Positions 1-54,600 of a stretch of 64,000 nucleotides of DNA are shown here, piece after piece. Positions within the stretch are counted from its first letter, which is position 1. Every line of letters begins with the position of its first letter. This DNA comes from Selaginella moellendorffii (Eukaryota; Plantae; Lycopodiophyta). Both the position numbers and the translations under genes were made by a program. The DNA is taken from positions 434,813-498,812 of the forward strand of contig NW_003314343.1 in the NCBI RefSeq assembly GCF_000143415.4, read 5' to 3'. The notes under the pieces are model-generated. The model ran no database searches and was not told where the DNA came from. It saw only the letters and a list, made by a program, of their open reading frames with translations.

Positions 1-1900
1 CAGCAGCTGCCGCCGCCGCCTCTTCTGTCCCCAGCCCTGCCACTCTCAACGGTGCCGCCACTGCTGCCGCTGGTCCTGGCGGAGGTTCGCTAGCTTGTTA
101 AGGAGGCCATGGGCAAGAAGATGTGTCCAATGGTTGAGGAGCCGTCTAAGGCTGAGGAGAGCATGCTGCGTGAGGACACACGATTGCCACCACTACCACA
201 GCCACCATGACGGTCGCCACCGTCGTCACCATGACCACCATGACCATCAGCACCATTGCCACCCTAAACCCTACTATTTCCTCCTCTATTTCATAGTGAG
301 AATCTCATATCCCACCATCAAGCGCTCACTGAGCAACGATTGGCAATGGTAGAACAACGATTGCAAGAGCTGTTGAAGCAGTTGCTGCCGCTGATGCCTC
401 GCCTGCAGCAGCAGCAACAGCTGCTGCCGCTGCCGCCGGCCCTGCCGATCTCAACGGTGCCGCCACTGCTACCGCTAGTCCTAGCGGAGGTTTGTTGGCT
501 TGTTAAGGAGGCCATGGGCGAGAAGATGTGTCCAATGGTTGAGGAGCCGTCCATGGTTGAGGAGAGCATTCTGGGTGAGGACACACGATTGCCACCACTG
601 CCACAACCACCATGACCATCGCCACCGTCGTCACCACGACCACCATGACCATCAGCACCATTGCCACCCTAAACCCTAAACCATAAACCCTACTGTTTCC
701 TCCTCTATTTTAGAGTGAGAATTTCATATCCCACCATCAGGCGCTCACTGAGCAGCGATTGGCAATGGTAGAACAGCAATTGCAAGGGCTATTGAAGCAG
801 TTGCTGCCACTGATGCCTCCCCTACAGCAGCAGCAGTAGCTACTGCCGCCGCCGCAGGCCCTGTTGCTCTCAACAGTGCCGCCATTGCTGCCGCTGGTCC
901 TGGCGGAGGTTCGCCGGCTTGTTAAGGAGGCCATGGGCGAGAAGATGTGTCCAATGGTTGAAGAGCCGTCCATGGTTGAGGAGAGCATGCTGGGTGAGGA
1001 CACACGATTGCCACCACTGCCACAGCCACCATGATGGTCGCCACCGTCATCACCACGACCACCATGACCATCAGCACCATTGCCACCCTAAACCCTAAAC
1101 CCTACTCTTTCCTCCTCTATTTCAGAGTGAGGATTTCATATCCCACTGTCAGGTGCTCATTCAGCAGCGATTGGCAATGGTAGAACAGCAATTGCAATAG
1201 CTGTTGAAGCAGTTGCCACCGTTGATGCCACCCCTACAGTAACAGCAGCAGCTGCCACTGCCTCCTCTGTCCCCGGCCCTGCTGCTCTCAACAGTGCCGC
1301 CACTGCTGCCGGTGGTCCAAGTGGAGGTTCGTAGGCTTGTTAAGGAGGCCATGGGCGAGAAGATGTGTCCAATGGTTGAGGAGCCCTCCATAGTTGAGGA
1401 GAGTATGCTGGGTGAGGACACACGATTGCCACCACTGCCACAACCACCACGACCGTTGCCACCATCATCAACACAACCACCATAACCATCGGCACCATTG
1501 CCAACCTAAACCCTAAACCCTAAACCCTACTGTTTCCTCCTCTATTTCAGAGTGAGGATTTTATATCCCACCGTCAGGCGCTCACTGAGTAGCAATTGGC
1601 AATGGTAGAACAGCAATTGCAAGTGCTGTTGAAGCAGTTGCCGTCGCTGATGCCACCCCTCCAGCAGCCACCACCGCATCCTCCTCCGTCCCCGGCCCTA
1701 CCGCTCTCAACGGTGCCCCCACTGCTGCTGCTGGTCCTGGCGGACGTTTGCTGGCTTGTTAAGGAGGCCATGGGTGAGAAGATGTGTCCAATGGTTGAGG
1801 AGCCATCCATGGCTAAGGAGAGCATGCTAGGTGAGGACACACGATTGCCACCACTGCCTCAACCACCACGACCATCGCCACCGTTGTTACCACGACCACC
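1..1900 (+). repeat. ~420-bp tandem satellite (module A: coiled-coil/Pro-rich coding-like segment plus a short CCCTAAA tract), about 4.5 copies
   Basis: The unit tttcctcctctatttcagagtgaggatttc...accattgccacc(ctaaacc)n recurs with a ~415-425 bp period (equivalent antisense ORFs end at 584, 1003, 1421 and 1840). Confidence 0.9.
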
Positions 1901-4099
1901 ATGACAATCGGCACCATTGCGACCGTCCTCACCACCACCACCACCGCAAGGGATGGGGACCATCACCAGTATGATCAGTGGATTGGTATCATCATTGTTG
2001 TTCCTACTGTGTCCAACACAATAGGATTGTCTATCATACTCCGAAAAATGAAAGTATGTAATCAGGTGTGTGTGTGTGTGTGTGAGATTGTGTAACTTAA
2101 AGTGCAGATTGCTACTACTACAACCATTGATCAGCCACCCTAGCCTTGATCCAGCTACAATCTTCTGTTTTGTTAATCTTCATTTAATCACCGTGGCTTT
2201 TGTGCCTTTGTTGAAACTGTAAGCTCTTATAGATGCTCAAAACTTTGGCCAGGCCAACGCTCCCAACAGCGTAGTTCCGGCTGGTCATGCCACTTTGCCT
2301 TGAACAAAAGAAGTGCCGCCCCTTGATGCCATTTGGACTTTGGAACAACACTTCGGAACACTGTGGCCCTACGCGAGTCTCATGGGTCTAAACCCTAAAC
2401 ACCAAACCCTAAACCCTAAACCCTAAACCCACATGGGAGATGGAAGCTTTTGAGCCCCCAGTGACACAGCACGCCATCATAGGTGCAGACCCGCTCTTAG
2501 TGCTCTCGGTGAAGAAGAAGATGCCATTGACAATGTTGCGGTGTGCAGAGAGCTCGCCTGGCCTGTGAAAACCCTCACCAAGTCCTTGTACCCACAGATG
2601 ATCCAATTGCCGCCAGGGCTCCAGTCGAGGCAAGTGATCATGTCCTGGATATTGGAGAGCAGCTAGAATGCCATGAACCCCTTGCGGCACCTCGGCATTC
2701 CAGCAGCAGGAGCAGAGGCAAAAGCATTGCAAAGGGGAGTCGAGCTAAGTTCTTATTAATTAGGGCGTTTGGGGTAGATCTAGAAAAGCAGTGAGAGATC
2801 ATGAATCTTTTTGTTCTCCTACTACTGTTTCCTCCTCTATTTCAGAGTGAGGATTTCATATCCCACCGTCAGGCACTAAGTGAGCAGCGATTGCAAGAGC
2901 TGTTGAAGCAATTGCCGCCGCTGATGCCACCCCTGCAGTAGCAGCAGCAGCAGCTGCCGCCACCGCCTCCTCTGTCCCCGGCCTTGCCGCTCTCAACGAT
3001 GGCGCCACTGCTGCTGTTGGTCCTCACGGAGGTTCGCCAGCTTGTTAAGGATGCCATGGGCGAGAAGATGTGTCTAATGGTTGAGGAGCCATCCATGGCT
3101 GACGAGAGCATGTTGGGTGAGGAGACACAATTGCCACCATTGCCACAACCACCACGACCATCACCACCGTTGTCACCATGACCACCATGACCATCAGCAC
3201 CATTGCCACCATCCTCAGAACACTGTGGCTCTACGCGAGCCTCATGGGTACTCTCCCCAAGCCCTAAACACTAAACCCTAAACCTGTATGGGAGGTGGAA
3301 GCTTTTCAGCCCACAGTGACACAGCACGCCATCCTAGGTGTAGACCCGCTCTCAATGCTCTTGGTTTAGGGCTTAGGGTTTAGGGTTTAGGGTTTACTAT
3401 TTCCTCCTCTATTTCAGAGTGAGGATTTCATATCCCACCGTCAAGCGCTCACTGAGCAGCAATTGGCAATGGTAGAACAACGATTGCAAGAGTTGTTGAA
3501 GCAGTTGCCGCCGCTGATGCCACCCCTACAGCAGCAACAACAACAACTACCGCCGCCGCCTCCTCCGTCCCCGGCCCTACCACTCTCAACGGTGCCGCCA
3601 CTGCTGCCGGTGGTCCTAGCGGAGGTTTGCCGGCTTGTTAAGGAGGCCATGGGCGAGAAGATGTGTCCAATGGTTGAGGAGCCGTCCATGGCTGAGGAGA
3701 GCATGCTGGGTGAGGACACACGATTGCCACCACTGCCACAACCACCACGACCGTCGCCACCGTCGTCACCACGACCACCATGACAATCGGCACCATTGCG
3801 ACCGTCCTCACCACCACCACCACCACCGCAAGGGATGGGGACCATCACCAGTATGATCAGTGGATTGGTATCATCATTGTTGTTCCTACTGTGTCTAGCA
3901 CACTAGGAATGTCTATTATACTCCAAAAGATGAAAGTATGTAATCAAGTGTGTGTGTGTGTGTGTGAGATTGTGTAACTTAGAGTGTAGATTGCTACTAC
4001 TACAACCATTGATCAGGCACCCTAGCCTTGATCTAGCTAGAATCTTTTGTTTTTTTAATCTTCATTTAATCACTGTGGCTCTTGTGCCTTTGTTGAGAC

Positions 4100-4480
4100 T
4101 GTAAGCTCTTGTGGATGCTCAAAACTTTGGCCAGGTCAACGCTCCCAATAGCGTAGATCAGGCTGGTCATGCCACTTTGCACAAGGCTCTGGTGGATCGC
4201 TCGAAAGCTTCGACCTGAGCGCAAGCATCAAGAACGATCCCGAGAGTGAGATAGAACGTCAGCCTCGCAGCGCTGGTAACTAGAGCAAGCCAAGATTGTG
4301 ATGCGAGCAAGCTTCCACCATGGTCACCACACAATCCTTGAGATGGCAGAACACGCTGTGAGCGCCTTAATGATGGTCACCTCCTTTGGCCTCAGCCTTG
4401 AACAAAAGAAGTGTCGCCCTCTGATGCCATTTGGACTTTGGAACAACACTTTGGAACATCGTGGCCCTACGCGAGCCTCA
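4100..4480 (-). pseudogene. Degenerate PPR-like fragment (module C)
   Basis: Minus strand gives LRPKEVTIIKALTACS, LGIVLDACAQVEA and YAIGSVDLAK, which resemble PLS-class PPR motifs. Confidence 0.45.
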
Positions 4481-4585
4481 TGTCTCTCTCCGGAATCGAA
4501 CCCTAATTCCCCGTTACCCGTCACCACCATGGTAGGCCTCTATCCTGGGTACTCTCCCCAAACCCTAAACCCTAAACTCTAAACC

Positions 4586-4870
4586 TGCACGGGAGATGGA
4601 AGCTTTTGAGCCCCCAGTGACACAGCATGCCATCCTAGGTGCAGACCCACTCTCAGTGCTCTCGGTGAAGAAGAAGACGCCATTGACAACGTTGCGGTGT
4701 GCAGAGAGCTCGCCTGGCCTATGAAAACCCTCACCAAGTCCTTGCAGCTGTAGATGATCCAATTGCCGCCGAGGCTCCAATCGAGGCAAGTGATCGTGTC
4801 CTGGATGCTGGAGAGCAACTGAAACGCCATGAACTCCTTGCGGCACCCAGGCATTCCACCAGCAAGAGTA
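4586..4870 (-). pseudogene. PWP2: PWP2/UTP1 WD40 N-terminal fragment (module B; further copies near 2430, 39625, 48506, 49065, 52331, 53553, 54382)
   Basis: Minus strand reads PGCRKEFMAFQLLSSIQDTITCLDWS.GGNWII..CKDLVRVF and then LSAHRNVVNGVFF, resembling the plant PWP2 N-terminal WD repeats. Frameshifted. Confidence 0.7.
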
Positions 4871-5317
4871 GAGGCGAAAGCATTGCAAAGGGGAATCGAG
4901 CTAAGGTCTTATTAATTAGGGCTCTTGGGGTGGATCTAGCAAAGCAGTGAGAGATCATGAATCTTTTTATTCTCCTCCTTCTACTGTTTCCTCCTCTATT
5001 TCAGAGTGAGGATTTCATATCCCATCGTCAAGCGCTCACTGAGCAGCGATTGGCAATGGTAGAACAGCGATTGCAAGAGCTATTGAAGCAGTTGCTACCA
5101 CTGATGCCACCCTTGCAACAGCAGCAGCAGCAGCCGCAGCAGCTGCCGCCTCCTCCTCCGTCCCCGGCCTTGCCGCTCTCAATGGTGCCGCCACTACTGC
5201 CGCTGGTCCTGGTGGAGGTTCGCCGGCTTGTTAAGGAGGCCATGGGCGAGAAGATGTGTCCAATGGTTGAGGAGTTGTCCATGGCTGAGGAGAGCATGCT
5301 GGGTGAGGAGACACGAT

Positions 5318-5465
5318 TCCATCTCGGGTCCATCTCGGACTCCATCTCAGGTCCATCTTGGGTCCATCTCAGACTCCATCTTGTGTCCATCTTGGGTCCA
5401 TCTCGGATTCCATCTCGGACTCCGTCTCAGGTCCATTTCGGACTCCATCTCGACTCCATCTCAAA
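5318..5465. repeat. 12-bp tandem tract (gactccatctcg-like) related to the chromovirus LTR minisatellite
   Basis: About 12 copies of tccatctcgg(a/g)(c/t), similar to the reverse-strand LTR repeat gactcgatctcg. Confidence 0.6.
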
Positions 5466-5554
5466 CACTTCCACGTGTCATGCTGGTCCTTTTGTCTCCC
5501 TTTTCTAGAGACTCATTCATTGCTTGCTTCATGCTTGTTCCTCGAGCACTTCAT

Positions 5555-14036: not shown

Positions 14037-14044
14037 AAAAACTT

Positions 14045-23890: not shown

Positions 23891-23959
23891 CTTGAAGAGT
23901 CAGTTTTTTCACCTTCATGTGTTGGCCCTTAATCAACCACGAATGGTCTTAAGCTCTTT

Positions 23960-36499: not shown

Positions 36500-37620
36500 G
36501 CATCAGGTTCTTTGAGGCTGAGGGAAGTGACCATCATCAAGGTGCTCACGGTGTGTTCCAAACCCTGGGAGCCATCCCAGGGGATTGTGAGGTAAACACG
36601 CTGGTGAGCATGGTGGAAGCTTGCTTGATGCCAAGGCGGGTGGAGCATCGCAACCAGCACTGCAAGGCTGACATTCTCGACCTCTTGCTTGAATCTCACT
36701 GTCAGGATCGTTCTCAACGCTTGTGCTTGGATTGAAGCTTTGGAGTGATCCACCAAAGCTTGATGCAAAGTTCGCTGTTGGGAGCCCCGGCAGCGTCATG
36801 TCCCTGTTCTTAAAGTTTTGAGCAACAGTCTCGACAAATGCAGAAGAGCTAGGGTGATTAGAACAAAAATTAGAAGATTTCTGCAAAAGCAAAAGCAATC
36901 TGGTAATTACATACTTTTAGCTTTTTTAATATCATAAATGTTCCTACTATGCCGATTGAGCATATCATAAACGTTCCTACTATGTTGGTGATGATCCAGC
37001 TAAGAGTCAATGATTCCAATCCAGTTATGATGATGGTGATGACAGGAAGAAGACTTGATAATCCTAATCCAGCTATGATGCTGATGCTAACATAAAGAAG
37101 AATCAATATAACATTGGTGATGGTGCTGGTGGTGGTCCTAGTGCTGGTGCAAGTCCCTGTGCTATTCTTTGCCCCTGTCCCCATCCTCTGTGGTGGTGGT
37201 GGTGGTGAGGATGGTGGCAGTGGTGGTGACAGTGGTGGTGGTCGTGGTGAGGATGGTGGCAGTGGTGGCAATCGTGTCTCCTCACCCAGCATGCTCTCCT
37301 CAACCATTGATGGTTCCTCATCCATGGAACCCATGGACGACGATTGTGGACACATCTCCTCACCCATAGACTCCCAGACCAGTGAGACCAACTCCGCCAT
37401 GAACTCCTGGACCACCGGCGGTGGCGTTGACAGCAGCGGAGGCAAAGGAGGCGGTGGCAGCTGTAGCGGCAATTGCTTCAATAGCTCTTGGAGTCGCTCC
37501 TCCACCACTGCCACTCGCTGCTCCACCACTGCCAATTGCTGCTCAAGGAGCGCCACTCAGTGGTAAATGATATCATCACTATTGATCCACCCAAACCCTT
37601 CCCAAAAGCCCTACAAGAAT
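36500..37620 (-). other. Diverged single copy of repeat modules A+C with an uninterrupted 228-codon frame (coiled coil, Pro-rich, C-terminal hydrophobic helices; no ATG at the start)
   Basis: ORF 36870..37556 shares EQRLQELLKQLP, EEPSMVEESMLGEETRLPPLP and KVCN with the repeat. It begins with GTG directly after a TGA. Confidence 0.7.
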
Positions 37621-39500: not shown

Positions 39501-39999
39501 CGCATAGTACCATCGAGAACATTGTGGCCCTACGTGAGCCTCATGGGTACTCTCCCCAAACCCGAAACCCTAAACCCCAAAACCTAAACCTTAAACCAAA
39601 ACCCTAAACCCTAAACCCTAAACCTGCATGGGAGATGGAAGCTTTTGAGCCCCTAGTGACACAGCACACCATCCTAGGTGCAAACCCACTCTTAGTGCTC
39701 TCGGTGAAGAAGAAGATGCCATTAACAACATTGCGGTGCCTAAAGAGCTCGCCTGGCCTATGAAAACCCTCACCTCAGAGTGAGGATTTCATATCCCACC
39801 GTCAAGTGCTCATTGAGCAGCAATTGGCAATGGTAAAACAGCGATTGCAAGAGTTGTTGAGGTAGTTGCCGCCACTGATGCCACCCCTACAACAGCAGCA
39901 GCAACAGTCGCCACCACCGCCTCCTCCGTCCCCGGCCCTACCGCTCTCAACAGTGGCGCCAACAGGTTGAAGCAGTTGCCGCCGCTGATGCCACCCCTG

Positions 40000-42900
40000 T
40001 GTAAGGAACCAACTCGCCGAGGGGTCGTAGGCTAAAGGAACCCCGAAAGCATGACCAAAATGACAAAGAGTTCATCGGATGGGACCAAGTCGAAGATCGA
40101 GTCCAAGACCGACTCTAGGACCGAGTTCGAGATAGAGTCCGGAATCGAGTCCGAGACCGACTCGGGGACCGAGTTCGAGTCCGAGTTTGAGACCGAGTTC
40201 GAGACGGAGTCCGAGATCCGAAATCGGGTCCGAGACCGAGTCCGAGGTCGAGTCTGAGGTCGGGTCCGAGATCAGGTCCGAGATCGAGTCCGAACCCGAA
40301 TCCGAAGTCGGATCCGAAATCGGGTCCGAGATCGAGCCAGAGACTAAGTCCAAATACTAATACGGGTCAAGGGGTGAAAGCCCAAAGCGTGCGTCTCCCA
40401 GGGGGGGGGGGGGGGCTGCAGGGGGTTCCAAAAGTATAGTAGGGATAGTGAGGTCCAGGAACCAGTTTTGAAGGGAACTCTCCAGTTGGGCTTCCAAACC
40501 GACTTGAGGTTGGGACTGGAACCGAGGGGCCTTGGGTGGGAGTGAGCATGGACTTGGCTGGTGCCGGAGGGGCCATTCAAGGAAGTGCTCAAGAGCAGCT
40601 CCCACTCCCGAAAGGGAAACCGATTGCGGTGCTCCCGGCTCATGTGGAGTGGTGCCCCACTTGAGTACCATGCGGCTCATTGGTCCTCGCCCTTCTTAGG
40701 GGCTTGGGCCTTCCTTCGGGATGGAAGTGGGGGGCGAGAGGTACCCATACCGGGCCGTTAGGCCATGGTGTTTCGCCCCGGCGTCCCGAAGCAAGTGTTG
40801 CACTCAAGACTTGGGATTTAGAGGGTCCCATGATCAAGTCTTGTGGTACCAAGGGATGTTAGGAACCTGGAAGCTTGGTGTGCTTGGCTGCTTGTGCTTG
40901 CGGGGAGTGTAGCCGAACCTTAAGTCCAGTCTAACCCGGGGAGGGGGATTGGGAGTGATTTGGGAATCCGTGGAAGGATGGCTAACACTCCGTTGCTCGT
41001 GCAGTGAGTAGCTGAAACCAAGTAGGAGCTGGTACCATAGGCGAGAACCTTGGCAAGGGAACTTAGCAAAAGCCAAGGCAGTGTTGGACGGATAGACGAG
41101 GTAAGCTGGCAAATTGGAAAGGAAAAATTTGTGGCTTACAATTTGGTATCGGAGCCTTTACCTCAGTTCTAGCGAAGGATAGAGGCGGATTGCTGGGAGA
41201 TGGCAAGGGCAGGGCGTAAGCGAACCCAGGCGGAGACGGAACCTCCGCCAGAGCTGGAGCCTCCGGTCGAACAAGAGGCTATGGATGAGGAATCCTTGCA
41301 TGAGGAGGACTCCAGTGAGGAAACCTCCAAACAGGAGTCCGGTGGCGAGGTTCGGTCGTCCAAGGCTCGATTGGACGTGCTAGAAGGACAGTTGGCACAG
41401 ACCAATGCCCTGCTGGAAACTCTCGTACGCAAGCTAAAGCGTGACGAGAGGCGGAAGAAAAAGAAAAAGACTGCAGATGCTGGCAGCGCAGAAGGTGCGG
41501 ATCTTTCGGCCGGGACTGAGGCAAAACCAGACAAGGTCGAACAGACCGAAGTGGAATCAGTCCCTCAGGCAGTTCCCAAGTACAAACCAAAGCCCCCACC
41601 GGTCTTCAAGGGAGTGAATGACTATAAGGTGGTGGAGGATTGGTTTTACGATATGGAGGACTACTTCCGAGCGCTGCGGTTACCAAGCTCGGAGAAGGTC
41701 CCATGTGCAAAACCATACTTGGCAGATAATGCCAAGTCTTGGTGGAGAACAACGGAGGCCAACGAAGGACCGGTGGTCACTTGGGACATGATGAAGGCGA
41801 GGATCCGCGCAACATATGTTCCTCCGAATGCCACTCTGCATCTGAGGGATGAACTGAGTAGGCTGAAACAGACAGGAACCATCCAGGAATATGTGAATGG
41901 GTTCATGGCAAAGAGGATACTTGTCACGGACATGGGGGATATGGATGCGTTCCATGCCTTCATATCAGGTTTGCAAACCTGGGCTCGCGGTGAGGTGATG
42001 AGGTGGAACCCGACCAACTACAAGGAAGCGTTGGATGCGGCCATCAAGGTGCATTTCAACGATAACCTGCGAAAGGGGAACACGACGGGGTCGGGATCCA
42101 CATTTAGCAAAGGGGCCAAACCAAGGGGAACGTATAGCAAGGGGAAATTCAAAAGGAGTTTCTCTAAGAATGAGTCCTCGGGGTTCCGGAAAGGCAAATC
42201 CGGTGGCCAGCGAGCGAGTACGTGGGGGAGTCAAGCGAAAAAGGACAAACCCACGGATAAGAAGGTCAAGTCGTATAGCAGCGTGGGAAACAACGTATGC
42301 TACAACTGCGGCGAAGCGGGACACTTCTCGAGGGAATGTCCCTACCCGAAGAAGGCCAGAGCCAATATGGCCATCAAGTCGGGTGAAGTCCAAACTGAGG
42401 TATGTGATCCAGTCCCTAACTCAAAGTTACTCATTACACGAGCAACTTTGGTAGAGAGTCGTTCGCGACATCTACTAGCCCTCCGAGGGAAGCTTGGAGG
42501 TAGCTTTGTTAAGATCCTTATTGACACGGGTGCTTCGGATAATTTTGTGGCTGCAGACATAGTCCGGCAAGCCAGACTAACGGTGCAGCGGCTAGGCGAA
42601 CCAAGGACTATAGAGTTTGTTCAGGGTAGCCAAAGCACCGATGAGGTACTTCGACAAGCGAGAGTCGAAGTGGGGACATGGAAAGTGGACATGGATTTCA
42701 CCGTCTTGGACATGGCGGGATTTGACGTGATCTTCAGAATGGATTGGTTTAATCGGTTCGTGGTAGCCCTGCATGGACAAGGTAGGAACCTTGTGGTATT
42801 GGCGAATGCCCAAGGAAGAAGATCTAGGGTGGAGGCCCAGGATCTAAAGGTAGGGCAAAGCAAGGCCAAAGAGTCATGCTTGAACCTGGTGTCCACGAGA

Positions 42901-45900
42901 GGACAACTCACTAAAGGAACTAAGGCAGCCTTTTTGTGCTTACTCTCGGTGAAGAGTGACAAAAAGACAAGAACGGAAGAAGTGCCTTTAGTGATCCAGC
43001 GAGTGTTGGACCAATTCCAGGATACCATGCCGGAGGAGCTACCGGCGGGGTTGCCCCCCGCACGACCGATAGAACATAAGATTGAGCTTGTCGAGGGCGC
43101 TGAGGCGGTGGTTCGTCCCCCCTATCATTCGAACGAAAAAGAACTCAAGGAGCTCAAGTGCCAACTAGAGGAGTTGGTGGGCAAAGGGTATGTTAGGTTG
43201 AGCAAGTCGCCGTATGGGGCGCCGGTATTATTTGTGAAAAAGAAAGATGGATCTATGCGCATGTGCATAGATTACCGGTTGCTCAACAAGTATACCAAGA
43301 AGAACAAGTACCCGTTGCCAAGGATTGAGGACCTGTTCGATAGGTTGGGAAAGGCAAAATACTTCTCGAGGATTGACCTAAGGTTAGGATACTACCAGAT
43401 CAGGGTAGCCGAGGAAGATGTCGAGAAGACAACCTGTCGAACGAGGTATGGGAGCTTTGAGTTTTTGGTGATGCCCTTTGGGCTGTGCAATGCGCCGGCA
43501 ATGTTTTCGGCGTTGATGAACCACATCTTTGTACCCTATCTGGATCACTTTGTGGTCGTCTATATTGACGACATCCTGATCTATAGCGAGACGCTAGAGG
43601 AGCATGCCGAACACTTGGCGAAGGTGTTTGAGAAACTAAGGGAACATAAACTGTATGCTAAAGAGAGCAAATGTGACTTTGCTCAGCAAGAGGTAAAGTT
43701 TCTCGGGCATGTGGTGGGCCAGGACAGGCTCAAGGTGGACCCGGAGAAGGTCCAAGCGATCCAGGAATGGGAGCGACCATCGAATGTACATGAGTTGAGG
43801 GCGTTCTTGGGGCTATGCAACTACTATCGAAAGTTTATCAGACACTATTCGAGAGTAGCCCTGCCCTTAACGGATCAAACGGGAAAAGGGAAGATGGTAT
43901 GGACAGCGGAATGCGAGGCGGCATTCGTCCACCTCAAAGGGAAGTTGAGGAAGGCTCCGGTGTTGGCATTACCGGACTTTGGTAAGGACTTTGAGGTAGA
44001 CACGGATGCTTCGGACTTTGCGTTAGGCGCAGTTTTGAAGCAAGACAACCATCCAGTAGCGTTCTTCTCGAAGAAGCTGGACAAGGCTCAACGGAAGTGG
44101 CCTGCCCACGAGAAGGAATTGTTTGCGGTGGTCAAGGCGCTCAAGGAGTGGCGACACTACCTTGGGAGACACTTCAAGGTTTACATGGACAATGTGGCAA
44201 CGAAACACTTCTTGTCACAACTCGACCTGAGAGGGAAACAAGGTCGGTGGGCCAATGCCTTGGCCGAGTTTGATTGCGAGATTCTGTATAAGCCTGGGAA
44301 GAGCAACATCGTGGCAGATGCGCTAAGTCGAAAAGCGAGCTTGAGGTTGGCGATCTCCAGCGCAACAGCAACCTTCTGGGACGATGTGCGGACAGCATAT
44401 GAGAACGATGGTCTATCACAAGAAGTGTTGTTGAGGAATCTGGAGGCACGGGAAGCTCACCAGAGAGGTGAGCCGCCAACGGAAGAGAAAACGGGCTATG
44501 CGGAACGCAATGGACTCATTTATTACAAGCAAACGAGGGTGTATGTTCCAGAAGGTGGACTAAGGAAGGTAGCCTTAGAAGAGTGTCATGACGGACCTCT
44601 TGCGGGACACGGCGGAGTGCCCAAGACGATGGGCTTACTCAAGAGGAAGTACCATTGGCCAGATATGGCTAAGGACGTCCAAGACTATGTAAAGACATGT
44701 CCAACATGTCAGCAGGTCAAAGCCGTGTCTAAGGCTAGTGGGGGCTTGTTGCAAAGCATCCCAATTCCAGATCGTCCGTGGAAATGTCTCACGATGGACT
44801 TCATCACGGGACTACCCCCAAGCGAGGGGTTCGATGCGATATTCGTGGTGGTGGATCGATTTTCGAAGATGGCACATTTCATACCCACCACAACGGAGGT
44901 GGATGCGGAAGGTGTGGCGAAACTGTTCTTCGAACAAGTGGTTCGAGTGCGGGGAAGGCCAAAGGAGATTATCTCAGATCGAGATAAGATCTTCACTAGT
45001 AGGTTCTGGAGGACCCTCCTAGAACAGTATCGCACCAAGTTGAAATTCAGCACAGCCTATCACCCACAGACAGGTATGGGGTATTAAGTCAAGTTTGGTG
45101 GTCCTAACACTTCTTGACAGACGGACAAACGGAAAGGGTGAATAGGCAGCTGGAGGATTATTTGCGATGCTATGTCTCGCGAGACCAGACCGATTGGGTA
45201 AGTCATTTGGGACTTGCGGAAATGTGTTATAACAACTCACCACATTCGAGTATCGGGGTGAGTCCATGGGAAGTCATCAATGGGCGAGCTATTGAAGGTC
45301 CTGTGGAACTCGGCGTGGCCGAGTATCATGGAGAGTTACCCGCAGGGGAGGCATTCACGGCGGAAAGACTCAACATTTGGAATCTAGTGAGGGATTCCTT
45401 GGAACGGGCTCAACAAAGGCAAACCAAGTACGCGAACCTAAAGCACCGGGATGTAGAGTTCCAAGCTGGGGAGAAGGTGTGGTTGAACACCAAGAACCTT
45501 AGGCTACCAAGTGGGATCAGCTGAAAGTTGACCCAAAGGTAAAAATGCATATATTCCTGTAAATGAATTGATCTTGAGTTCCTTAAGCAGGTTCGCGGGG
45601 CCTTACGAGATTGAGGCACGAATCGGTAAAGTGGCTTACCGACTCCGACTTCCTCGAGAGATGGGGAACCTGCACCCAGTGTTCCATGTGAACTTACTCA
45701 AGCCGTACTTTGAGGATCCGCTTCGCAAGGACCAAGTAAGACCTTTACCTGAGGTTATCCAAGGGGAAGAGGAATACGAAGTCGAGGCCATCCTCAATGC
45801 GCGCAAGAGCAAGCAACAAGGACGCGAGGTGAGAGAGTTCCATGTGAAGTGGAAAGGATTTCCACACTGCGAAGCAACATGGGAACCGGAGGAGAACCTA

Positions 45901-47526
45901 GCGAACGCGCGAGATCTAGTGGAGGAATTTCTGCAAGGCAGAACTCTATGTACTTATGCAAAGTTCAATTAAAAATATCAATTTGCAAAGTTGAGCAAGT
46001 GGCATATGTTGGGACCCGAAGGCGCGCCGAAGGTGAGCTAATTAGCATGGGTTAGCTAGGTCGACCAGGCGTAGGGAGCTACGCCCGACTCCCTGCGGGG
46101 ATGTCGAATCCGTAGACGTATTCTACGGAGGTTGGGTTCGAGTCCCAACCCCCTAGTAAAGCAAGGCTGGGTTCAAGTCCCGACCCTATACTAGGGCGTG
46201 GTGAGGTGAGGAGTATAGGGACACCTATATTCCGTTGTCATGGGCTCCTTGCCGGGGAGGCTAACTTAGGCACACCGCTAAGTGGGGGGATGCCCCCGGA
46301 GACATGGTCAACAAGTCGTAGGATAAAATGAGACGTTCGATGTGGGCATCGAACTTCTTCTATGGGTGGTGGAGTTGTAAGGAACCAACTCGCCGAGGGG
46401 TCGTAGGCTAAAGGAACCCCGAAAGCATGACCAAAATGACAAAGAGTTCATCGGATGGGACCAAGTTGAAGATCGAGTCCAAGACCGACTCTAGGACCGA
46501 GTTCGAGATAGAGTCCGGAATCGAGTCCGAGACCGACTCGGGGACCGAGTTCGAGTCCGAGTTCGAGACCGAGTTCGAGACGGAGTCCGAGATCCGAAAT
46601 CGGGTCCGAGACCGAGTCCGAGGTCGAGTCCGAGGTCGGGTCCGAGATCGGGTCCGAGATCGAGTCCGTGATCGAGTCCGAACCCGAATCCGAAGTCGGA
46701 TCCGAAATCGGGTCCGAGATCGAGCCAGAGACTAAGTCCAAATACTAATACGGGTCAAGGGGTGAAAGCCCAAAGCGTGCGTCTCCCAGGGGGGGGGGGG
46801 GTTGCAGGGGGTTCCAAAAGTATAGTAGGGATAGTGAGGTCCAGGAACCAGTTTTGAAGGGAACTCTCCAGTTGGGCTTCCAAACCGACTTGAGGTTGGG
46901 ACTGGAACCGAGGGGCCTTGGGTGGGAGTGAGCATGGACTTGGCTGGTGCCGGAGGGGCCATTCAAGGAAGTGCTCAAGAGCAGCTCCCACTCCCGAAAG
47001 GGAAACCGATTGCGGTGCTCCCGGCTCAAGTGGAGTGGTGCCCCACTTGAGTACCATGCGGCTCATTGGTCCTCGCCCTTCCTAGGGGCTTGGGCCTTCC
47101 TTCGGGATGGAAGTGGGGGGTGAGAGGTACCCATACCGGGCCGTTAGGCCACGGTGTTTCGCCCCGGCGTCCCGAAGCAAGTGTTGCACTCAAGACTTGG
47201 GATTTAGAGGGTCCCATGATCAAGTCTTGTGGTACCAAGGGATGTTAGGAACCTGGAAGCTTAGTGTGCTTGGCTGCTTGTGCTTGCGGGGAGTGTAGCC
47301 GAACCTTAAGTCCAGTCTAACCCGGGGAGGGGGATTGGGAGTGATTTGGGAATCCGTGGAAGGATGGCTAACACTCCGTTGCTCGTGCAGTGAGTAGCTG
47401 AAACCAAGTAGGAGCTGGTACCATAGGCGAGAACCTTGGCAAGGGAACTTAGCAAAAGCCAAGGTAGTGTTGGACGGATAGACGAGGTAAGCTGGCAAAT
47501 TGGAAAGGAAAAATTTGTGGCTTACA
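40000..47526 (+). mobile_element. Full-length Ty3/gypsy chromovirus LTR retrotransposon
   Basis: LTRs at 40000-41140 and 46376-47526 (TG...CA, nearly identical). PBS tggtatcggagcc at 41144-41156 (tRNA-iMet type). PPT at 46362-46375. 5-bp TSD ccctg/ccttg with one mismatch. Confidence 0.97.
41200..45972 (+). CDS. Gag-Pol polyprotein (Gag, CCHC knuckle, PR, RT, RNase H, IN, chromodomain); exons 41200-45073, 45121-45538, 45591-45972; premature TGA at 45522 in this copy
   Basis: Contains [37 protein letters not shown] and TMDFITGLP. Splicing restores [13 protein letters not shown] and KLTQRFAGPY. Chromodomain YEVEAIL...VKWKGF...TWEP. Confidence 0.92.
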
Positions 47527-50405
47527 CCTTGCAGCAGCAGCAGCCACCGCCGCTACTGCCTCCTCCGTCTCCGGCCCATCCGCTCTCAATGGTGCCGCCA
47601 CTGCTGCTGCTAGTCTTGGCGGAGGTTCGCTGGCTTGTTAAGGAGGCCATGGGCGAGGGTTTAGGGTTTCCACAATTGCCACCATTGCCACAACCACCAC
47701 AACCATCGCCACCGTCGTCACCACGACCACTATGACCATCGGCACCATTGCCACCATCCTTATCACCACCACCACTGCAAGGGATGGGGACTATCACCAA
47801 CATGATCAATGGATTGGTATCATCATTATTGTTCCTACTGTGTCCAACACAGTAGGATTGTATATCATACTCCGAAAGATGAAAGTATGGAATCAAGTGT
47901 GTGTGTATGTGTGTGTGTGTGTGTGAGATTGTCTAACTTAGAGTGCAGATTGCTACTACGACGACCACTGATCAGCAGCCCTAGCTTTGATCTAGCTGCA
48001 ATCTTCTGTTTTCTAAATCTTCATCTAATCACTGTGGCTCTTGTGGATGCTCAAAACCTTGGTTAGGCCAACGCTCCCAACAGCGTAGTTCAGGGTGGTC
48101 ATGCCACTTTGCACAAGGCTTTGGTGGATCGCTCAAGAGCTTCGACTTGAGTGCAAGTGTCGAGAACCGGTTTTTAGAATGTGAGATAGACTGTCAACCT
48201 CGCAGCGCTTGTAACTAGAGCAAGCCAAGATTGTGATGCGAGCAAGCTTCCACCATGCTCACCACACAATCCCTGAGATGGCGGAACACGGTTGTGAGTG
48301 CCTTCATGATGGTCACCTCCCTTGGCCTAAGCCTTGAACAAAAGAAGTGTTGCCCCTTGGTGCCATTTGGACTTTGGAACAACACTTCAGAACACTGTAG
48401 CCATACGTGAGCCTCATGGGTACTCTCCCCAAACCCTAAACCTTAAACCCTAAACCCCAAACCCTGAACCCTAAACCCTAATCCCTAAACTGTAAACCCT
48501 AAACCTGCATGGGAGATGGAAGCTTTTGAGCCCCCAGTGACACAGCACACCCTAAACCCTAAACCCTAAACCATTGACAACGTTGTAGTGCCTAGAGAGC
48601 TCGCTTGGCTTGTGAAAACCCTCACCAAGTCCTTGCAGCCGCTGATGATCGAATGTCTGCCAGGGCTTCAGTCGAGGCAAGTGATCATGTCCTAGATGCT
48701 GGAGAGCAGCTGGAACGCCATGATCTCCTGTGGCACCCAAGCATTCCACCAGCAGGAGCAGAGGTGAAAGCATTGCAAAGGGGAATCGAGCTAATTAATC
48801 GCTCTCAACAGTGCCACCATTGCTGCCGCTGGTCTTGGCGGAGGTTCGCTAGCTTGTTAAGGGGGCCATGGGTGAGAACATGTGTCCAATGGTTGAGGAG
48901 CCGTCCATGGCTGAGGAGAGCATGCTGGGTGAGGAGACACGATTGCCACCACTGCCACAACCACCACGACTGTCGCCACCGTCATCACCACGACCACCAT
49001 GACCACTGGCACCATTGCCACCATCCTAAACCCTAAACCCTAAACCTACATGAGAGAGCAAGCTTTAGTGACGTAGCATGCCATCCTAGGTGCAGACCCG
49101 CTCTTAGTGCTCTCGGTGAAGAAGAAGACACCATTGACAACGTTGCAGTGCGCAGAGAGCTCACCTGGCCTGTGAAAACCCTCACTAAGTCCTTGCAGCC
49201 GCAGATGATCCAATTGCTGCCGGGGCTCCAGTCGAGGCAAGTGATCGTGTCCTAGATGCTGGAGAGCAGCTGGAATGCCATGAACTCCTTGCAGCACCCG
49301 GGCGTTCCACCAGCTGGAGCAGAGGCAGAAGCATTGCAAAGGGGAATCGAGCTAAAGTCCTATTAATTAAGGCTTTTGGGATGGATCTAGCAAAGCGGTG
49401 AGAGATCATGAATCTTCTTATTCTCCTCCTGCTACTATTTCCTCCTCTATTTTAGAGTGAGGATTTCATATCCCACCGTTATGCGCTAATTGAGCAGCGA
49501 TTGACAATGGTAGAAGAGCAATTGCAAGAGCTATTGAAGAAGATGCCGCCACTGATGCCACCCTTACAATAGAAGCAGAAGTAGCAGCAGCTGCTGCCGC
49601 AGCCTCCTTCGTCCCTAGCCTTGCCGCTCTCAACGGTGCCGCCATTGCTGCCGCTGGTCTTGGAGGAGGTTCACCCGCTTGTTAAGGAGGCCATGGGCGA
49701 GAAGATGTGTCCAATGGTTGAGGAGCCATCCATGGCTGAGGAGAGCATGCTGGGTGAGGAGACACGATTGCCACCACTGCCACAACCACCACGACTATCG
49801 CCACCGTCATCACCACGACCACCATGACCATCGGCATCATTGCCACCATCCTCACCACCACCACCACCACAAGGGATGGGGACCATCACCAGCATGATTA
49901 GTGGATTGGTATCATCATTGTTGGTCCTACTATGTCCAGTATAGTAGGAATGTCTATCATACTCCGAAAGATGAAAGTATGTAATCAAGTGTGTGTGTGT
50001 GTTTGAGATTGTCTAACTTAGAGTGCAGGTTGCTCCGTCTACGACCACTGATCAGCAGCCCTAGCCTTGATCCAGCTACAATCTTCTGTTTTGTGAATCT
50101 TCATCTAATCACCGTGGCTCTTGTGCCTTTGTTGAGACTGTAAGCTCTTGTGGATGCTCAAAACATTGGCCAAGCCAACGCTCCCAATAGCGTAGTTCAA
50201 GGTGGTCATGCCACATTGCACAAGGCTCTGGTGGATCGCTCTAGAGCTTCAACCTAAGCACAAGCATCGAGAACAATCCCGAGAGTTAGATAGAATGTCA
50301 GCCTCGTAGCACTGGTAACTAGAGCAAGCCAAGATTGTGATACAAGCAAGCTTCCACCATGCTCACCACACAATCCCTGAGATGGCAAAACATGCTGTGA
50401 GCGCT

Positions 50406-51654
50406 TGTAAGCCACAAATTTTTCCTTTCCAATTTCCCAGCTTACCTTGTCTACCCGTGCAACACTGCCTTGGCTTTTGCTAAGTTCCCTCACCAAAGTT
50501 CCCGCCTATGGTACCAGCTCCTACTTGGTCCTACTTGGTTTCAACTACTCAATGCATGAGCAATAAAGTGTTAACCATCCATACATGGATACCCAATTCT
50601 CTCCCAATCCCCCTCCCCAGGTTAAACTAGACCTAAGGTTCGGCTACACTCCCCACAGGCACAAACAACCAAGCACACCAAGCCTCTAGGTTCCTAACAC
50701 CCCTTGGTACCACAAGACTTGATCATGGGACCCTTTAAATCCCAAGTCTTGGGTGCAACACTTGCTTCGGGATGCCGGGGCAGAACACCATGGCCTAACG
50801 GCCACCTCTACCCCCCCACTTCCATCCCAAAAGAAGGCCCAAGCCCCTAGGAAGGGCAAGGACCAATGAGTTGCATGGTACTCAAGTGGGGCACCACTCC
50901 ACATGAATCGAGAGCACCGCAGTCGGTTTCCCTTTCGGGAGTGGGAGCTGCTCTTGAGCACTTCCTGGGGTGGCCCCTCCGGCACCACCCACATCCATGC
51001 TCACTCCCACCCAAGGCCCCTCGGCCCCAGTCTCAACCTTAAGTTAGTTTGGAAGCACCACTGGAGAGTTCCTTCGAGACTGGTTCCTGGACCTCACTAT
51101 CCCTACTATACTTTTGGAACCCCCTGCAGCCCCCCCCCGCCCCCCCCGAGAGACGCACGCTTTGGGCTTTCACCCCTTGACCCGTATTAGTACTCGGACT
51201 CGGTCTCAGACTCGATCTCAGACTCGATCTCGGACCCGACTTCGGACTCGGTCTTGAACTTGATCTCGGACCTAATTTCGGACTCGGTCTCGGACTCGAT
51301 CTCGGACTCGATCTCGGACCCGACTTCAGACTCGGTCTCGCACTCGATCTCGAACCCGACTTCGGACTCAGTCTCGAACTCGATCTCGGACTCCATCTCG
51401 GACCCGATCTCTAACTCAACTTCGGACTCGGCCTCGGACCCAATTTGGATCTCGAACTCTGTCTCAAACTCGGTCTTGAACTCGGTCTCCGATTCGGCCT
51501 CGGACTCGATCCCGGACTTCATCTCGAACTCGGTCTCAAAGTCGGTCTTGGACTGCATCTTGGACTCGGTCCCATCTGATGAACTCTTTGTCATTTTGGT
51601 CATGCTTTCGGGGATCCTTTAGCCTATGAGACCTTGGCGAGTTGGTTCCTTACA
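50406..51654 (-). mobile_element. Solo LTR of the same chromovirus family
   Basis: tgtaagcc...ccttaca, flanked by a perfect 5-bp TSD gcgct (50401-50405 and 51655-51659). Confidence 0.95.
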
Positions 51655-54600
51655 GCGCTTTGATGATGGTCACCTCCCTTGGCCTTAGCCTTGAACAAAA
51701 GAAGTGCCACCATGTGGTGCCATTTGGACTTTAGAACAACACTTTGGAACACTGTGGCCCTATGTGAGCCTCATGGGTACTCTCCCCAACCCCTAAACCC
51801 TAAACCCCAAACCTAAACCCTAAAGTCCTATTAATTAGTGCTCTTGGGGTGGATTTAGCAAAGCGGTGAGAGATCATGGAACTTCTTATTCTCCTCCTGC
51901 TACAGTTTCCTCCTCTATTTCAGAGTGAGGATTTCATATCCCACCGTTAGGCACTCACTGAGCAGCGATTGGCAATGGTAGAATAGCGATTGTAAGAATT
52001 GTTGAAGCAGTTGCCGCCCCTGATGCCACCTATGCAGCAGCAGCAGCCACCGCCACCGCTGCCTCCTCCGTCGCCGGCCCTGCCGCACTCAACAGTGCTG
52101 CCACTATTACCGTTGGTCCTAGCAGAGGTTCGCCGGCTTGTTAAGGAGGCCATAGGTGAGAAGATGTGTCCAATGGTTGAGGAGCCGTTCATGGCTGAGG
52201 AGAGCATGCTGGGTGAACAGACACGATTGCCACCACTGCCACAACCACCACGACTGTCGCCACCATCGTCACCACGACCACTATGACCATCGGCACCATT
52301 GCCACCATCCTAAACCCTAAACCCTAAACCTACATAGGAGATGGCAAGCTTTTGAGCCCCCAGTGACATAGCATGCCATCCTAGGTGCAGACCCGCTCTT
52401 AGTGCTCTCGGTGAAGAAGAAGACGCCATTGACAATGTTGCGGTGCGCAGAGAGCTCGCCTTGCCTGTGAAAACCCTCACTAAGTCCTTGCAGCCGTAGA
52501 TGATCCAATTGCCGCTGGGGCTCCAGTTGATGCAAGTGATCGTGTCCTGGATGCTGGAGAGCAGCTGGAACGCCATGAACTCTTTGCGGCACCCAGGCGT
52601 TCCACTCACCTAAACCCTAAACCCTCAACAGTGCCGCCACTGCTGCCGCTGGTCTTGGTGGAGGTTTGCCGGCTTGTTAAGGAGGCCATGGGCGAGAAGA
52701 TGTGTCCAATGGTTGAGGAGCTGTCCATGGCTAAGGAGAGCATGTTGGGTGAGGAGACAGGATTGCCACCACTGCCACAACCACCACGACTGTTGCCATT
52801 GTCGTCACCACGACCACCATGACCATCGGCACCATTGCCACCATCCTCACCACCACCACCACCGCAAGGGATGGGGACCATCACCAACATGATCAATGGA
52901 TTGGTATCATCATTGTTGTTCCTACTGTGTCCAGCACAGTAGGAATGTCTATCATACTCCGAAAGATGAAATTATGTAATCAAGTGTGTGTGTATGTGTA
53001 TGTGTGTGTGTGTGTGTGTAAGATTGTCTAATTTAGAGTGCAAATTGTTGCTACTACGACCACTGATCAGCAACCCTAGCCTTGATCCAGCTGCAATCTT
53101 CTATTTTGTAAATCTTCATCTAATCACCATGGCTCTTGTGGATTCTCAAACTTTGGCCAAGCCAACGCTCCCAACAGCATAGTTCAGGGTGGCCATGCCA
53201 CATTGCACAAGGCTCTGGTGGATCACTCCAGAGCTTCAACCTAAGCGCAAGCATCGAGAACGATCCCGAGAGTGAGATGGAACGTCAGCCTCGTAGCGCT
53301 GGTAACTAGAGCAAGCCAAGATTGTGATGTGAGCAAGCTTCCACCATGCTCACCACATAATCCCTAAGATGGCAGAACACAGTTGTGAGTGCCTTGATAA
53401 TGGTCACCGCCCTTGGCCTCAATCTTGAACAAAAGAAGTGCTGCCTCTTGATGCCATTTGGACTTTGGAACAACACTTTGGAACATTGTGGCCCTATGCA
53501 AGCCTCATGGGTACTCTCCCCAAATCCTAAACCCCAAGTCCTAAACCCTAAACTTGCACGGGAGATGGAAGCTTTTGAGCCCCCAGTGACATAGCATGCC
53601 ATCCTAGGTGCTGACCCGTTCTTAGTGCTCTCGGTGAAGAAGAAGATGCTATTGACAACGTTGCGGTGCGTAGAGAGCTCGCCTGGCTTGTGAAAACCCT
53701 CATTAAGTCCTTGCAGCCACAGATGATCCAATTGCTGGGGCTCCAGTTGAGGCAAGTGATTGTGTCTAGGATGTTGGAGAGCAGCTGGAATGCCATGAAC
53801 TCCTTGCGGCACCCGGGCGTTCCACCAGCAGGAGCAGAAGCGAAAGCATTGCAAAGGGGAATCGAGCTAGTGTCTTATTAATTAGGGCTCTTGGGGTGGA
53901 TGTAGCAAAGTGGTGAGAGATCATGAATCTTTTTATTCTCCTCTTGCTATTGTTTCCTCCTTTATTCCGGAGGAAGGATTTCATATCCCACCGGTAGGTG
54001 CTCAATAAGCAGCAATTGCCAATGGTAGAACAGCGATTGCAAGAGCTGTTGAAGCAGTTGCCGCCGCTGATGCCACCCCTGCAAAAGCAGCAGCCGCCGC
54101 TGCCACCTCCTTTGTCCCTGGCCCTGTTGCTCTCAACAGTTCTGCCATTGCTGCCGCTGCTCCTCGCGGAGGTTCGCCGGCTTGTTAAGGAGGCGATGGG
54201 CGAGAAGATGTGTCCAATGGTTGAGGAGCCATCCATGGCTGAGGAGAGCATACTGGGTGAGGAGACACAATTGCCACCACTGCCACAACCACCACAACCT
54301 TCGCCACCATCGTCACCACGACCACTATGACTATCGCCACCATTGCCACTATCCTAAACCCTAAACCCTAAACCCTAAACCTGCACAGGAGATGGCAAGC
54401 TTTTGAGCCCCCAATGACATAGCATGCCATCCTAGGTGCAGACCCGCTCTTAGTGCTCTCGGTGAAGAAAAAGTTGCCATTGACAACGTTGCAGTGCGTA
54501 GAGAGCTCGCCTAGCCTGTGAAAACCCTCATTAAGTCCTTGCAGCCATAGATGATCCAATTGCTGGGGCTCCAGTTGAGGCAAGTGATCGTGTCCTGGAT

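What the first reader, a model, noticed from the sequence alone, without database searches (positions are those of the whole stretch)
262..54381. Short telomeric tracts act as filler at rearrangement junctions of the repeat
Seen: about 18 tracts of 2-10 CCCTAAA-like units (near 262, 667, 1086, 1503, 2388, 3255, 4556, 39554, 48427, 48550, 49025, 51785, 52309, 52609, 53518, 54353) plus two reversed TTTAGGG tracts (3363, 47657). All lie at module junctions, and none is evident in the gene island. Some are inherited copies of one junction, but at least five (262-type, 3363, 47657, 48550, 52609) fill distinct deletions, often with 2-3 nt of telomere-like microhomology at the flanks. Established: short interstitial telomeric repeats can be inserted during double-strand break repair, and telomere-associated endonuclease-deficient Penelope-like elements are joined by such tracts. 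Inference: recurrent telomerase- or telomere-templated healing shapes this repeat family.
Basis: partly seen in the sequence, partly recalled or inferred. Interest (0 to 1): 0.75.

Follow-up and report, generated by a model that had tools for sequence, protein, structure and literature searches.

The report
Telomere repeats patching a plant satellite
A 1.5-kb plant tandem repeat carries a short telomere-repeat tract at each unit border, and a few more tracts, two of them reversed, were later inserted as patches where copies broke and were rejoined; this kind of repair scar is known in mammals but rarely seen this clearly in a plant.

Summary
All 18 tracts of the plant telomere unit CCCTAAA are at the stated places (41 two-unit matches against 0.01 expected). 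Every one sits at a discontinuity of a single 1485-bp repeat unit, U, and none lies in the gene island.

Most tracts are inherited. Six mark the normal unit border (U-end to U-start). Three (U808 to U1), one (U-end to U308) and possibly the four of the 419-bp array (U803 to U388) can come from that border tract by one deletion ending in it.

Four are lesions inside otherwise colinear units:
- 48549-48572: about 40-50 bp lost, forward tract.
- 52606-52628: 318 bp lost, forward tract.
- 3363-3396: 315 bp lost, reversed tract.
- 47658-47670: 61 bp lost, reversed tract.

The two reversed tracts cannot come from deletion or slippage. A paralogous higher-order copy lacks the 48549 and 47658 lesions.

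New telomeric filler at end-joining junctions is therefore supported. Whether telomerase, copying of a resident tract, or capture of a free fragment supplied it cannot be settled from this window. A 65-nt 18S rRNA filler shows the same repair style.

No Penelope-like element is present; the only reverse transcriptase belongs to a chromovirus. The closest known cases are mammalian short interstitial telomeric insertions and the Chlamydomonas Suber subtelomeric repeat.

The parts
49045..51783 (+). Most complete copy of repeat unit U (U1-1360 at 49045-50404, U1356-1485 at 51654-51783). It is interrupted by a reversed solo LTR at 50405-51653 with a 5-bp target duplication.
2388..2430 (+). Canonical border tract a1 (U-end to U-start).
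3255..3284 (+). Canonical border tract a2.
4556..4585 (+). Canonical border tract a3.
39554..39624 (+). Canonical border tract a4, about 10 degenerate units.
48427..48505 (+). Canonical border tract a5, about 11 degenerate units, the longest in the window.
53518..53552 (+). Canonical border tract a6.
49024..49046 (+). Junction b1 (U808 to U1). The right flank is canonical. It fits one 677-bp deletion ending in the border tract, with CCT microhomology.
52308..52330 (+). Junction b2, an inherited copy of b.
54352..54381 (+). Junction b3, an inherited copy of b with one extra unit.
264..1529 (+). Four copies of junction c (U803 to U388) at 264-270, 667-692, 1085-1104 and 1504-1529. This is the junction of the 419-bp tandem array (29-1924).
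51784..51824 (+). Junction d (U-end to U308). The left part of the tract is canonical. It fits one 307-bp deletion ending in the border tract, with CTAAA microhomology.
48549..48572 (+). Junction e. About 40-50 bp of U (about U46-85) is replaced by three perfect CCCTAAA units. The lesion is absent from the paralogous copy at 53553-54355.
52606..52628 (+). Junction f. U267-584 (318 bp) is replaced by about 18 nt of telomeric units, with 2 extra nt (TC) on the left.
3363..3396 (+). Junction g. U74-388 (315 bp) is replaced by a REVERSED tract (TTTAGGG on the + strand, about 4.5 units). Both flanks are in forward orientation.
47658..47670 (+). Junction h. U658-718 (61 bp) is replaced by 13 nt of REVERSED telomeric sequence. 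The lesion is absent from the paralogous copy at 52624 onward.
4483..4547 (-). 65-nt filler inside U1477 that is a fragment of eukaryotic 18S rRNA. It is an independent example of filler-type repair in this array.
   Evidence: RF01960, 4491-4536, E=3.6e-4
54713..64000 (+). 316-bp tandem array derived from U327-654. Its junctions have no tract. It is interrupted by a 5'-truncated chromovirus copy at 57535-60826.
40000..47526 (+). Full-length Ty3/gypsy chromovirus (LTRs 97.8% identical; gag-PR-RT-RNaseH-INT-chromodomain) inserted into one U copy, with target duplication CCCTG/CCTTG. It holds the only reverse transcriptase in the window.
36515..37580 (-). Diverged (about 60-65%) tract-free paralogue of U412-1387 in the gene island, with an intact 228-aa proline-rich ORF (36870-37556). 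U copies look like pseudogenes of it.

Best explanation
The flanks of the window (1-5321 and 39516-64000) are arrays of one plant repeat family. Its 1485-bp unit U ends in a short, degenerate CCCTAAA tract. That border tract is ancestral and was copied along with the unit. The 830-bp, 419-bp and 316-bp sub-arrays arose from U by deletion or duplication followed by amplification. On top of this, broken copies were rejoined by error-prone end joining. In at least two cases, and probably four, the gap was patched with newly made telomeric repeats in either orientation. The step I think most likely (inferred, about 40% among the possible sources) runs as follows. One resected 3' end that finishes in 2-5 bases matching the telomerase template is extended by telomerase for 2-4 repeats. 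The extended end is then joined to the other end, with or without microhomology. Copying of a resident tract by microhomology-primed synthesis is about as good an explanation (about 35%). Ligation of a free telomeric fragment is a third option (about 15%). Shown here: tract positions, orientations, flanks, microhomologies, and colinearity with paralogues. Inferred: the enzyme and the template.
For: Tiling against U gives eight tract-bearing junction classes and about eight tract-free ones. Lesions e, f, g and h lie inside units whose two sides stay colinear, with 40-50, 318, 315 and 61 bp lost and 20, 18, 29 and 13 nt gained. Two are forward and two reversed. Region 47533-49070 aligns end to end with 52590-54405 (84% mean column identity). 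The two share the layout [U585-1485, border tract, U1-808, b tract]. Lesions h and e occur only in the first region and f only in the second, so these tracts postdate that duplication. On the side from which synthesis would start (right for C-rich tracts, left for G-rich tracts), every junction has in-register microhomology of 2-5 nt. The far side sometimes has none and carries 1-2 extra bases, as in f and h. The perfect 23-nt runs in e and g are longer than any perfect run in the adjacent degenerate border tracts (15 and 14 nt). Other junctions show ordinary filler or microhomology repair: a 65-nt 18S rRNA filler, TTAAT and CTC fillers, and 3-5-nt overlaps. Insertion of telomeric repeats at double-strand breaks, possibly with telomerase, is the accepted origin of short interstitial telomeric sequences in primates (PMC6410037).
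Against: Only one 64-kb window could be studied. No other copies of the family were found, and the organism could not be identified. Forward lesions e and f could each also arise from two deletions flanking one b-type tract, because tandem U1-808 units exist. For e this needs endpoints that fall within 40 bp of each other in unit coordinates, which I estimate at roughly a 1-in-10 coincidence. Junctions b and d, and possibly c, need no filler at all. Resident tracts lie 45 and 80 bp from e and g, so local templating is not excluded. The singletons e to h cannot be checked against reads.
Confidence: 0.72

Rival explanations
1. Every tract descends from the one ancestral border tract. The tract is a fragile, recombination-prone site, and all odd junctions are deletions with one end inside it, plus slippage.
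For: Junctions b (canonical right flank), d (canonical left part, CCCCAA start) and possibly c (left edge equals b minus 3 bp) fit single tract-anchored deletions. Interstitial telomeric tracts are known fragile sites (PMC6410037).
Against: Tracts g and h are reversed while both of their flanks are forward. Lesions e and h are absent from the colinear paralogue. Lesions e and f would each need two deletions meeting in one tract.
Confidence: 0.1
2. The filler is copied from a resident tract nearby, in cis or on the sister chromatid, by microhomology-primed, polymerase-theta-type or replication template-switch synthesis. Telomerase plays no part.
For: Microhomology is present on both sides in c, e and g. 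Tracts lie 45 bp from e and 80 bp from g. TTAAT at 48795-48799 looks like a local templated filler. Filler DNA and microhomology are typical of plant end joining (abstract of PMC8395108). A local template would explain why 4 of about 9 deletion scars carry telomeric filler.
Against: Tract h lay at least 500 bp from any tract before the retrotransposon inserted. The perfect runs in e and g exceed those in the neighbouring tracts as they stand today. The 18S filler shows that distant sequence is also used.
Confidence: 0.3
3. U units are non-autonomous retroelements added to chromosome ends by an endonuclease-deficient Penelope-like reverse transcriptase, with telomerase-made tracts between successive additions.
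For: Tracts separate head-to-tail units in one orientation. Endonuclease-deficient Penelope-like elements are restricted to chromosome termini (abstract of PMC8557442).
Against: The only reverse transcriptase is that of a Ty3/gypsy chromovirus. U ORFs have no domain hits. No hammerhead or any other Rfam family is found. The sequence left of the tracts ends at U1485, U808/803, U45 or U266 rather than at one constant 3' end. Two tracts are reversed.
Confidence: 0.03
4. The singleton tracts are assembly artefacts (chimeric joins in a repeat).
For: Lesions d, e, f, g and h each occur once, and repeats are hard to assemble. No reads were available.
Against: Junction classes a, b and c recur in copies that differ by 7-16%, so tracts at junctions are a real feature. 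Mis-joins do not create telomeric sequence with in-register microhomology. The flanks of e and h are colinear with a paralogue.
Confidence: 0.05

Closest known systems
Short interstitial telomeric sequences inserted at double-strand-break repair sites in primates and rodents (Nergadze-type s-ITS; reviewed in PMC6410037)
   Same: A few exact telomeric units are inserted at a break, absent from the related empty site, with small deletions and microhomology. Either orientation occurs.
   Different: Here the unit is the plant heptamer. The events are clustered (4-5 in about 33 kb) inside one tandem repeat that already carries tracts, and each replaces 40-320 bp. The comparison uses paralogous copies, not orthologous loci. 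For plants, the review PMC8621592 offers break repair only as a possible source of short interstitial tracts.
Chlamydomonas reinhardtii subtelomeric Suber and Sultan repeats (PMC8287924)
   Same: Suber is a 1.5-2.5-kb tandem unit carrying up to 10 degenerate telomere repeats (about 80 bp) at one border. U is 1.5 kb with 3-11 degenerate units at its border. Those authors propose that such seeds prime telomere healing.
   Different: There is no sequence relationship. A terminal position is not shown here, since no terminal array is present and a gene island lies between the two arrays. Internal patches and reversed tracts are not described for Suber in the passages I read.
Yeast Y' elements separated by short internal telomeric tracts (from my own knowledge, not checked here)
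   Same: Head-to-tail subtelomeric units with telomere tracts between them, in telomere orientation.
   Different: A different organism and unit. Y' encodes a helicase, while U carries only a pseudogene-like proline-rich ORF.
Filler DNA in plant non-homologous or polymerase-theta-mediated end joining (PMC8395108, PMC8871565)
   Same: Deletion plus short inserted sequence plus microhomology. The 18S rRNA and TTAAT fillers here are of this kind.
   Different: The repeated use of telomeric sequence as the filler is the unusual point.
Endonuclease-deficient Penelope-like elements (Athena, Coprina)
   Same: Units joined by short telomeric tracts.
   Different: No such reverse transcriptase, no ribozyme motif and no constant 3' end. 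This is not a member.

Membership tests
Short interstitial telomeric insertion at a repaired break | A few units of the species' own telomere repeat at an internal site | tested here: met
   13-29 nt of CCCTAAA/TTTAGGG at e, f, g and h. That this heptamer is the species' own telomere unit is inferred from its being a land plant.
Short interstitial telomeric insertion at a repaired break | Tract absent from the related 'empty' site | tested here: met
   The native sequence across every breakpoint is intact in 4-20 other copies. Lesions e and h are absent from the colinear paralogue. These are paralogues, not orthologues.
Short interstitial telomeric insertion at a repaired break | End-joining signature (small deletion, microhomology or a few extra bases) | tested here: met
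   40-318 bp lost, 2-5 nt of in-register overlap, and extra TC (f) and C (h).
Short interstitial telomeric insertion at a repaired break | Synthesis by telomerase | not testable with these tools
   This needs mutants or a marked template RNA.
Subtelomeric tandem repeat with a telomere-like border (Suber/Sultan/Y' type) | Tandem unit with a telomeric tract at its border, all in one orientation | tested here: met
   Six canonical U-end/tract/U-start borders, all C-rich on the + strand.
Subtelomeric tandem repeat with a telomere-like border (Suber/Sultan/Y' type) | Array adjoins a chromosome end | not testable with these tools
Endonuclease-deficient Penelope-like element | Penelope-type reverse transcriptase ORF | tested here: not met
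   The only RT is RVT_1 within a gag-PR-RT-RNaseH-INT-chromodomain polyprotein. U ORFs give no hits. Sequence not assigned to U or the retrotransposon is too short to hold such an ORF.
Endonuclease-deficient Penelope-like element | Constant 3' end abutting the telomeric tract, with variable 5' truncation | tested here: not met
   The sequence left of the tracts ends at four or five different U positions, and two tracts are reversed.
Endonuclease-deficient Penelope-like element | Hammerhead ribozyme motif in the terminal repeats | tested here: not met
   No Rfam family reaches its gathering score anywhere in the window.
Polymerase-theta-type templated filler | An identifiable template close to the junction | tested here: inconclusive
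   Tracts lie 45 bp (e) and 80 bp (g) away, but their present perfect runs are shorter than the filler. Tract h was at least 500 bp from any tract.

The most novel reading that the evidence does not exclude
In this plant lineage, a tandem repeat that carries resident telomere tracts recurrently draws telomerase to its own internal breaks. New tracts are then seeded in either orientation. The family would be a self-reinforcing nursery of interstitial telomeric sites, and it would be natural evidence that plant telomerase takes part in internal break repair.
Probability: 0.25. Interest if true: 0.6.

Novelty: new member of a known kind. Interest (0 to 1): 0.42.

Why it matters
In plants, break repair has only been suggested as a source of short interstitial telomeric tracts. 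Here, paralogous copies act as before-and-after controls and show such patches at base-pair resolution, including reversed ones. If the pattern holds genome-wide, the family would be a natural substrate for testing whether telomerase or templated end joining supplies the filler. It would also allow a test of whether resident tracts make a repeat fragile or prone to healing. The finding does not reveal a new kind of element.

Tried and rejected
- Penelope-like or other retroelement origin of U: rejected. There are no domains in U ORFs, no Rfam hit and no constant 3' end.
- Internal repeats in U that could explain the deletions as unequal crossing-over: none found.
- Other copies of the family: two exact-pattern scans of metagenome contigs gave nothing related. 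The 21 loci are chance 18-mer matches.
- Organism identity: the GT47 protein fragment is at best 56% identical to a Selaginella protein, and the chromovirus polyprotein is at best 42% identical to anything. The source is a land plant whose proteins are not in the collection; I went no further.
- The large representative-protein search, structure prediction and the third word search were not used, because no claim depends on them.
- The idea that g is a snap-back copy of the tract 80 bp upstream could be neither supported nor excluded, since any two telomeric tracts look alike.
- Nothing in the window looked human.
Full report

Yes. The two-unit pattern CCCTAAACCCTAAA (at most 1 mismatch, both strands) occurs 41 times, against 0.01 expected from shuffles. 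Two of them are very short. The tract at 264-270 is one unit, and the one at 47658-47670 is 13 nt, reading GGTTTAGGGTTTC. The longest are 39554-39624 and 48427-48505, at about 10-11 degenerate units. None lies in the gene island.

**2. What the window is**

It comes from a land plant. The island (about 7500-38000) encodes a GT47 exostosin-type glycosyltransferase, a DUF7358 protein and a HARE-HTH/WHIM1 protein. The GT47 fragment is at best 56% identical to a Selaginella protein. The species' own proteins are evidently not in the collection, so I could not name it.

The two flanks (1-5321 and 39516-64000) are built from one repeat unit. I call it U and gave it coordinates 1-1485, using 49045-50404 plus 48302-48426. 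U has no internal repeats. Its ORFs match no protein family.

A diverged, tract-free, inverted paralogue of U412-1387 lies in the island at 36515-37580. It keeps an intact 228-aa proline-rich ORF. The array units therefore look like amplified pseudogene-bearing segments.

A Ty3/gypsy chromovirus has inserted repeatedly into the arrays:
- A full copy at 40000-47526, with LTRs 97.8% identical, a 5-bp target duplication and a chromodomain.
- A 5'-truncated copy at 57535-60826.
- Solo LTRs at 50405-51653 and 6123-6757.

It carries the only reverse transcriptase in the window. Rfam and ARAGORN find no RNA genes.

**3. Junction table**

With a tract:

| Class | Jump in U coordinates | Position(s) | Note |
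|---|---|---|---|
| a | U1485 to U1 | 2388, 3255, 4556, 39554, 48427, 53518 | normal unit border, six copies |
| b | U808 to U1 | 49024, 52308, 54352 | three copies |
| c | U803 to U388 | 264, 667, 1085, 1504 | junction of the 419-bp array |
| d | U1485 to U308 | 51784 | single |
| e | about U45 to U86 | 48549 | single |
| f | U266 to U585 | 52606 | single |
| g | U73 to U389 | 3363 | reversed |
| h | U657 to U719 | 47658 | reversed |

Without a tract:

| Jump in U coordinates | Note |
|---|---|
| U1175 to U1390 | plain deletion |
| U810 to U1446 | plain deletion |
| U141 to U410 | CTC filler |
| U311 to U581 | TTAAT filler |
| U1081 to U1100 | small deletion |
| U654 to U327 | junction of the 316-bp array |
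| U605 to U385 | 5-nt overlap |
| U402 to reversed U498 | inverted join |

A 65-nt filler at 4483-4547, inside U1477, is a fragment of eukaryotic 18S rRNA (RF01960, E=3.6e-4).

**4. Which tracts are inherited and which are new?**

Class a is the ancestral unit border. Its tracts share a degenerate CCCCAA start and are the most decayed (81-88% matches).

Class b keeps the canonical right flank, and class d keeps the canonical left part. Each is most simply one deletion ending in the border tract, with 3-nt and 5-nt overlaps.

The left edge of class c equals that of b minus 3 bp. Class c may therefore be b plus one more tract-anchored deletion, and it stays ambiguous.

Classes e, f, g and h are different. 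In each, both sides belong to one colinear unit. A stretch of 40-50, 318, 315 or 61 bp is replaced by 20, 18, 29 or 13 nt of telomeric sequence. Two are forward and two reversed.

A direct alignment supports this. Region 47533-49070 and region 52590-54405 are colinear higher-order copies with the layout [U585-1485, a tract, U1-808, b tract]. Lesions h, e and the tract-free 269-bp deletion occur only in the first region, and f occurs only in the second. These lesions therefore arose after that duplication, at sites that hold ordinary U sequence in 4-20 other copies.

The reversed tracts g and h cannot be produced from a forward tract by deletion or slippage, and their flanks are not inverted.

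For e and f, a two-deletion route through a b-type tract is still formally possible. For e it requires the two outer endpoints to fall within 40 bp of each other in unit coordinates, which I estimate at about 1 in 10. It is more economical to treat all four look-alike lesions as one process with random orientation.

**5. Mechanism**

Consider the end from which synthesis would start. This is the right flank for C-rich tracts and the left flank for G-rich tracts. That end always carries 2-5 nt that are in register with the repeat: a 3, c 3, d 5, e 2, f 2, g 3, h 2. The opposite end has 0-3 nt and sometimes 1-2 extra bases.

This is what one expects if one 3' end is extended on a telomeric template and then joined to the other end. 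It fits telomerase priming. It fits microhomology-primed copying of a resident tract equally well.

Weak points in favour of telomerase or a true telomere as the source:
- The perfect 23-nt runs in e and g exceed any perfect run in the neighbouring decayed tracts (15 and 14 nt).
- Tract h lay at least 500 bp from any tract before the chromovirus inserted.
- The 18S filler shows that distant sequence is also used.

A point in favour of local templating is that 4 of about 9 deletion scars carry telomeric filler. That frequency is easiest to explain if the template is at hand. I cannot separate the two from this window.

**6. Comparison with what is known**

Insertion of telomeric repeats at break-repair sites is the accepted origin of short interstitial telomeric sequences in primates, and there is experimental evidence for telomerase-dependent insertion (PMC6410037). 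For plants, a review lists break repair only as a possible source (PMC8621592).

The canonical U-plus-tract architecture closely parallels the Chlamydomonas Suber subtelomeric repeat. Suber is a 1.5-2.5-kb unit with up to 10 degenerate telomere repeats at one side, and those authors suggest such seeds prime telomere healing (PMC8287924).

Membership in the endonuclease-deficient Penelope-like elements fails on all three features tested.

**7. Limits**

Only one window was available. The position relative to a chromosome end is unknown, and no reads were available for the singleton junctions.

**Verdict**

The 'filler at junctions' reading is supported for two to four independent events and is unnecessary for about half of the tracts. 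The telomerase claim is unproven, and the Penelope link is rejected. This is a clear plant example of a known kind of repair scar, set in a Suber-like repeat.

Noticed in passing
window 4483-4547: A 65-nt fragment of eukaryotic 18S rRNA (antisense) is inserted as filler inside a U copy just before its border tract (Rfam RF01960 at 4491-4536, E=3.6e-4).
   Followed up: yes
window 19200-24000: A very AT-rich block (15-36% GC, against about 50-55% around it) sits inside the gene island. It has no protein-family, RNA-family, tRNA or repeat signal. Its origin is unexplained.
   Followed up: partly
window 40000-47526, 57535-60826, 50405-51653, 6123-6757: All four copies or remnants of one chromovirus lie in the repeat-rich flanks (three of them inside U arrays) and none in the 30-kb island. 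The full and the truncated copy are flanked on the left by the same U site (ending CCACCCCTG). This suggests either target preference or a segmental duplication.
   Followed up: partly
window 6762-7502; 5590-6060 and 38046-38526: A 740-bp near-palindrome (88% between arms) lies at 6762-7502. A 480-bp inverted pair (90% identical) brackets the whole gene island.
   Followed up: no
U385-412 (e.g. window 690, 1102, 1527, 3395, 39777, 56558, 57396): One short stretch of U is a recurrent breakpoint, used by junctions c, g, U141 to U410 and U605 to U385. It is also the edge of the island paralogue. It lies in a pyrimidine-rich run ending in AG.
   Followed up: partly
canonical borders, e.g. window 39535-39640 and 48410-48520: An imperfect direct repeat (CCTCATGGG / CCTGCATGGG) flanks 'TACTCT + tract'. 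It looks like a target-site-type duplication around the ancestral tract.
   Followed up: no
junctions f, g (318 and 315 bp), U141 to U410 and U311 to U581 (268 and 269 bp), and the 316-bp array: Lesion sizes cluster in two narrow classes, one of which equals the period of the 316-bp array. This is unexplained, since there are no internal repeats in U.
   Followed up: partly
window 36870-37556 (- strand): An intact 228-aa ORF has a coiled N-terminus, a proline-rich middle and a hydrophobic tail, and matches no known family. The array units are decayed copies of it.
   Followed up: partly
window 52310-52609 (-) and 38708-39205 (-): Weak WD40-like matches (E about 0.002-0.005, below threshold) occur on the minus strand of U1-266 and in the sequence just left of the right-hand array. 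The first module of U may be a gene fragment.
   Followed up: no
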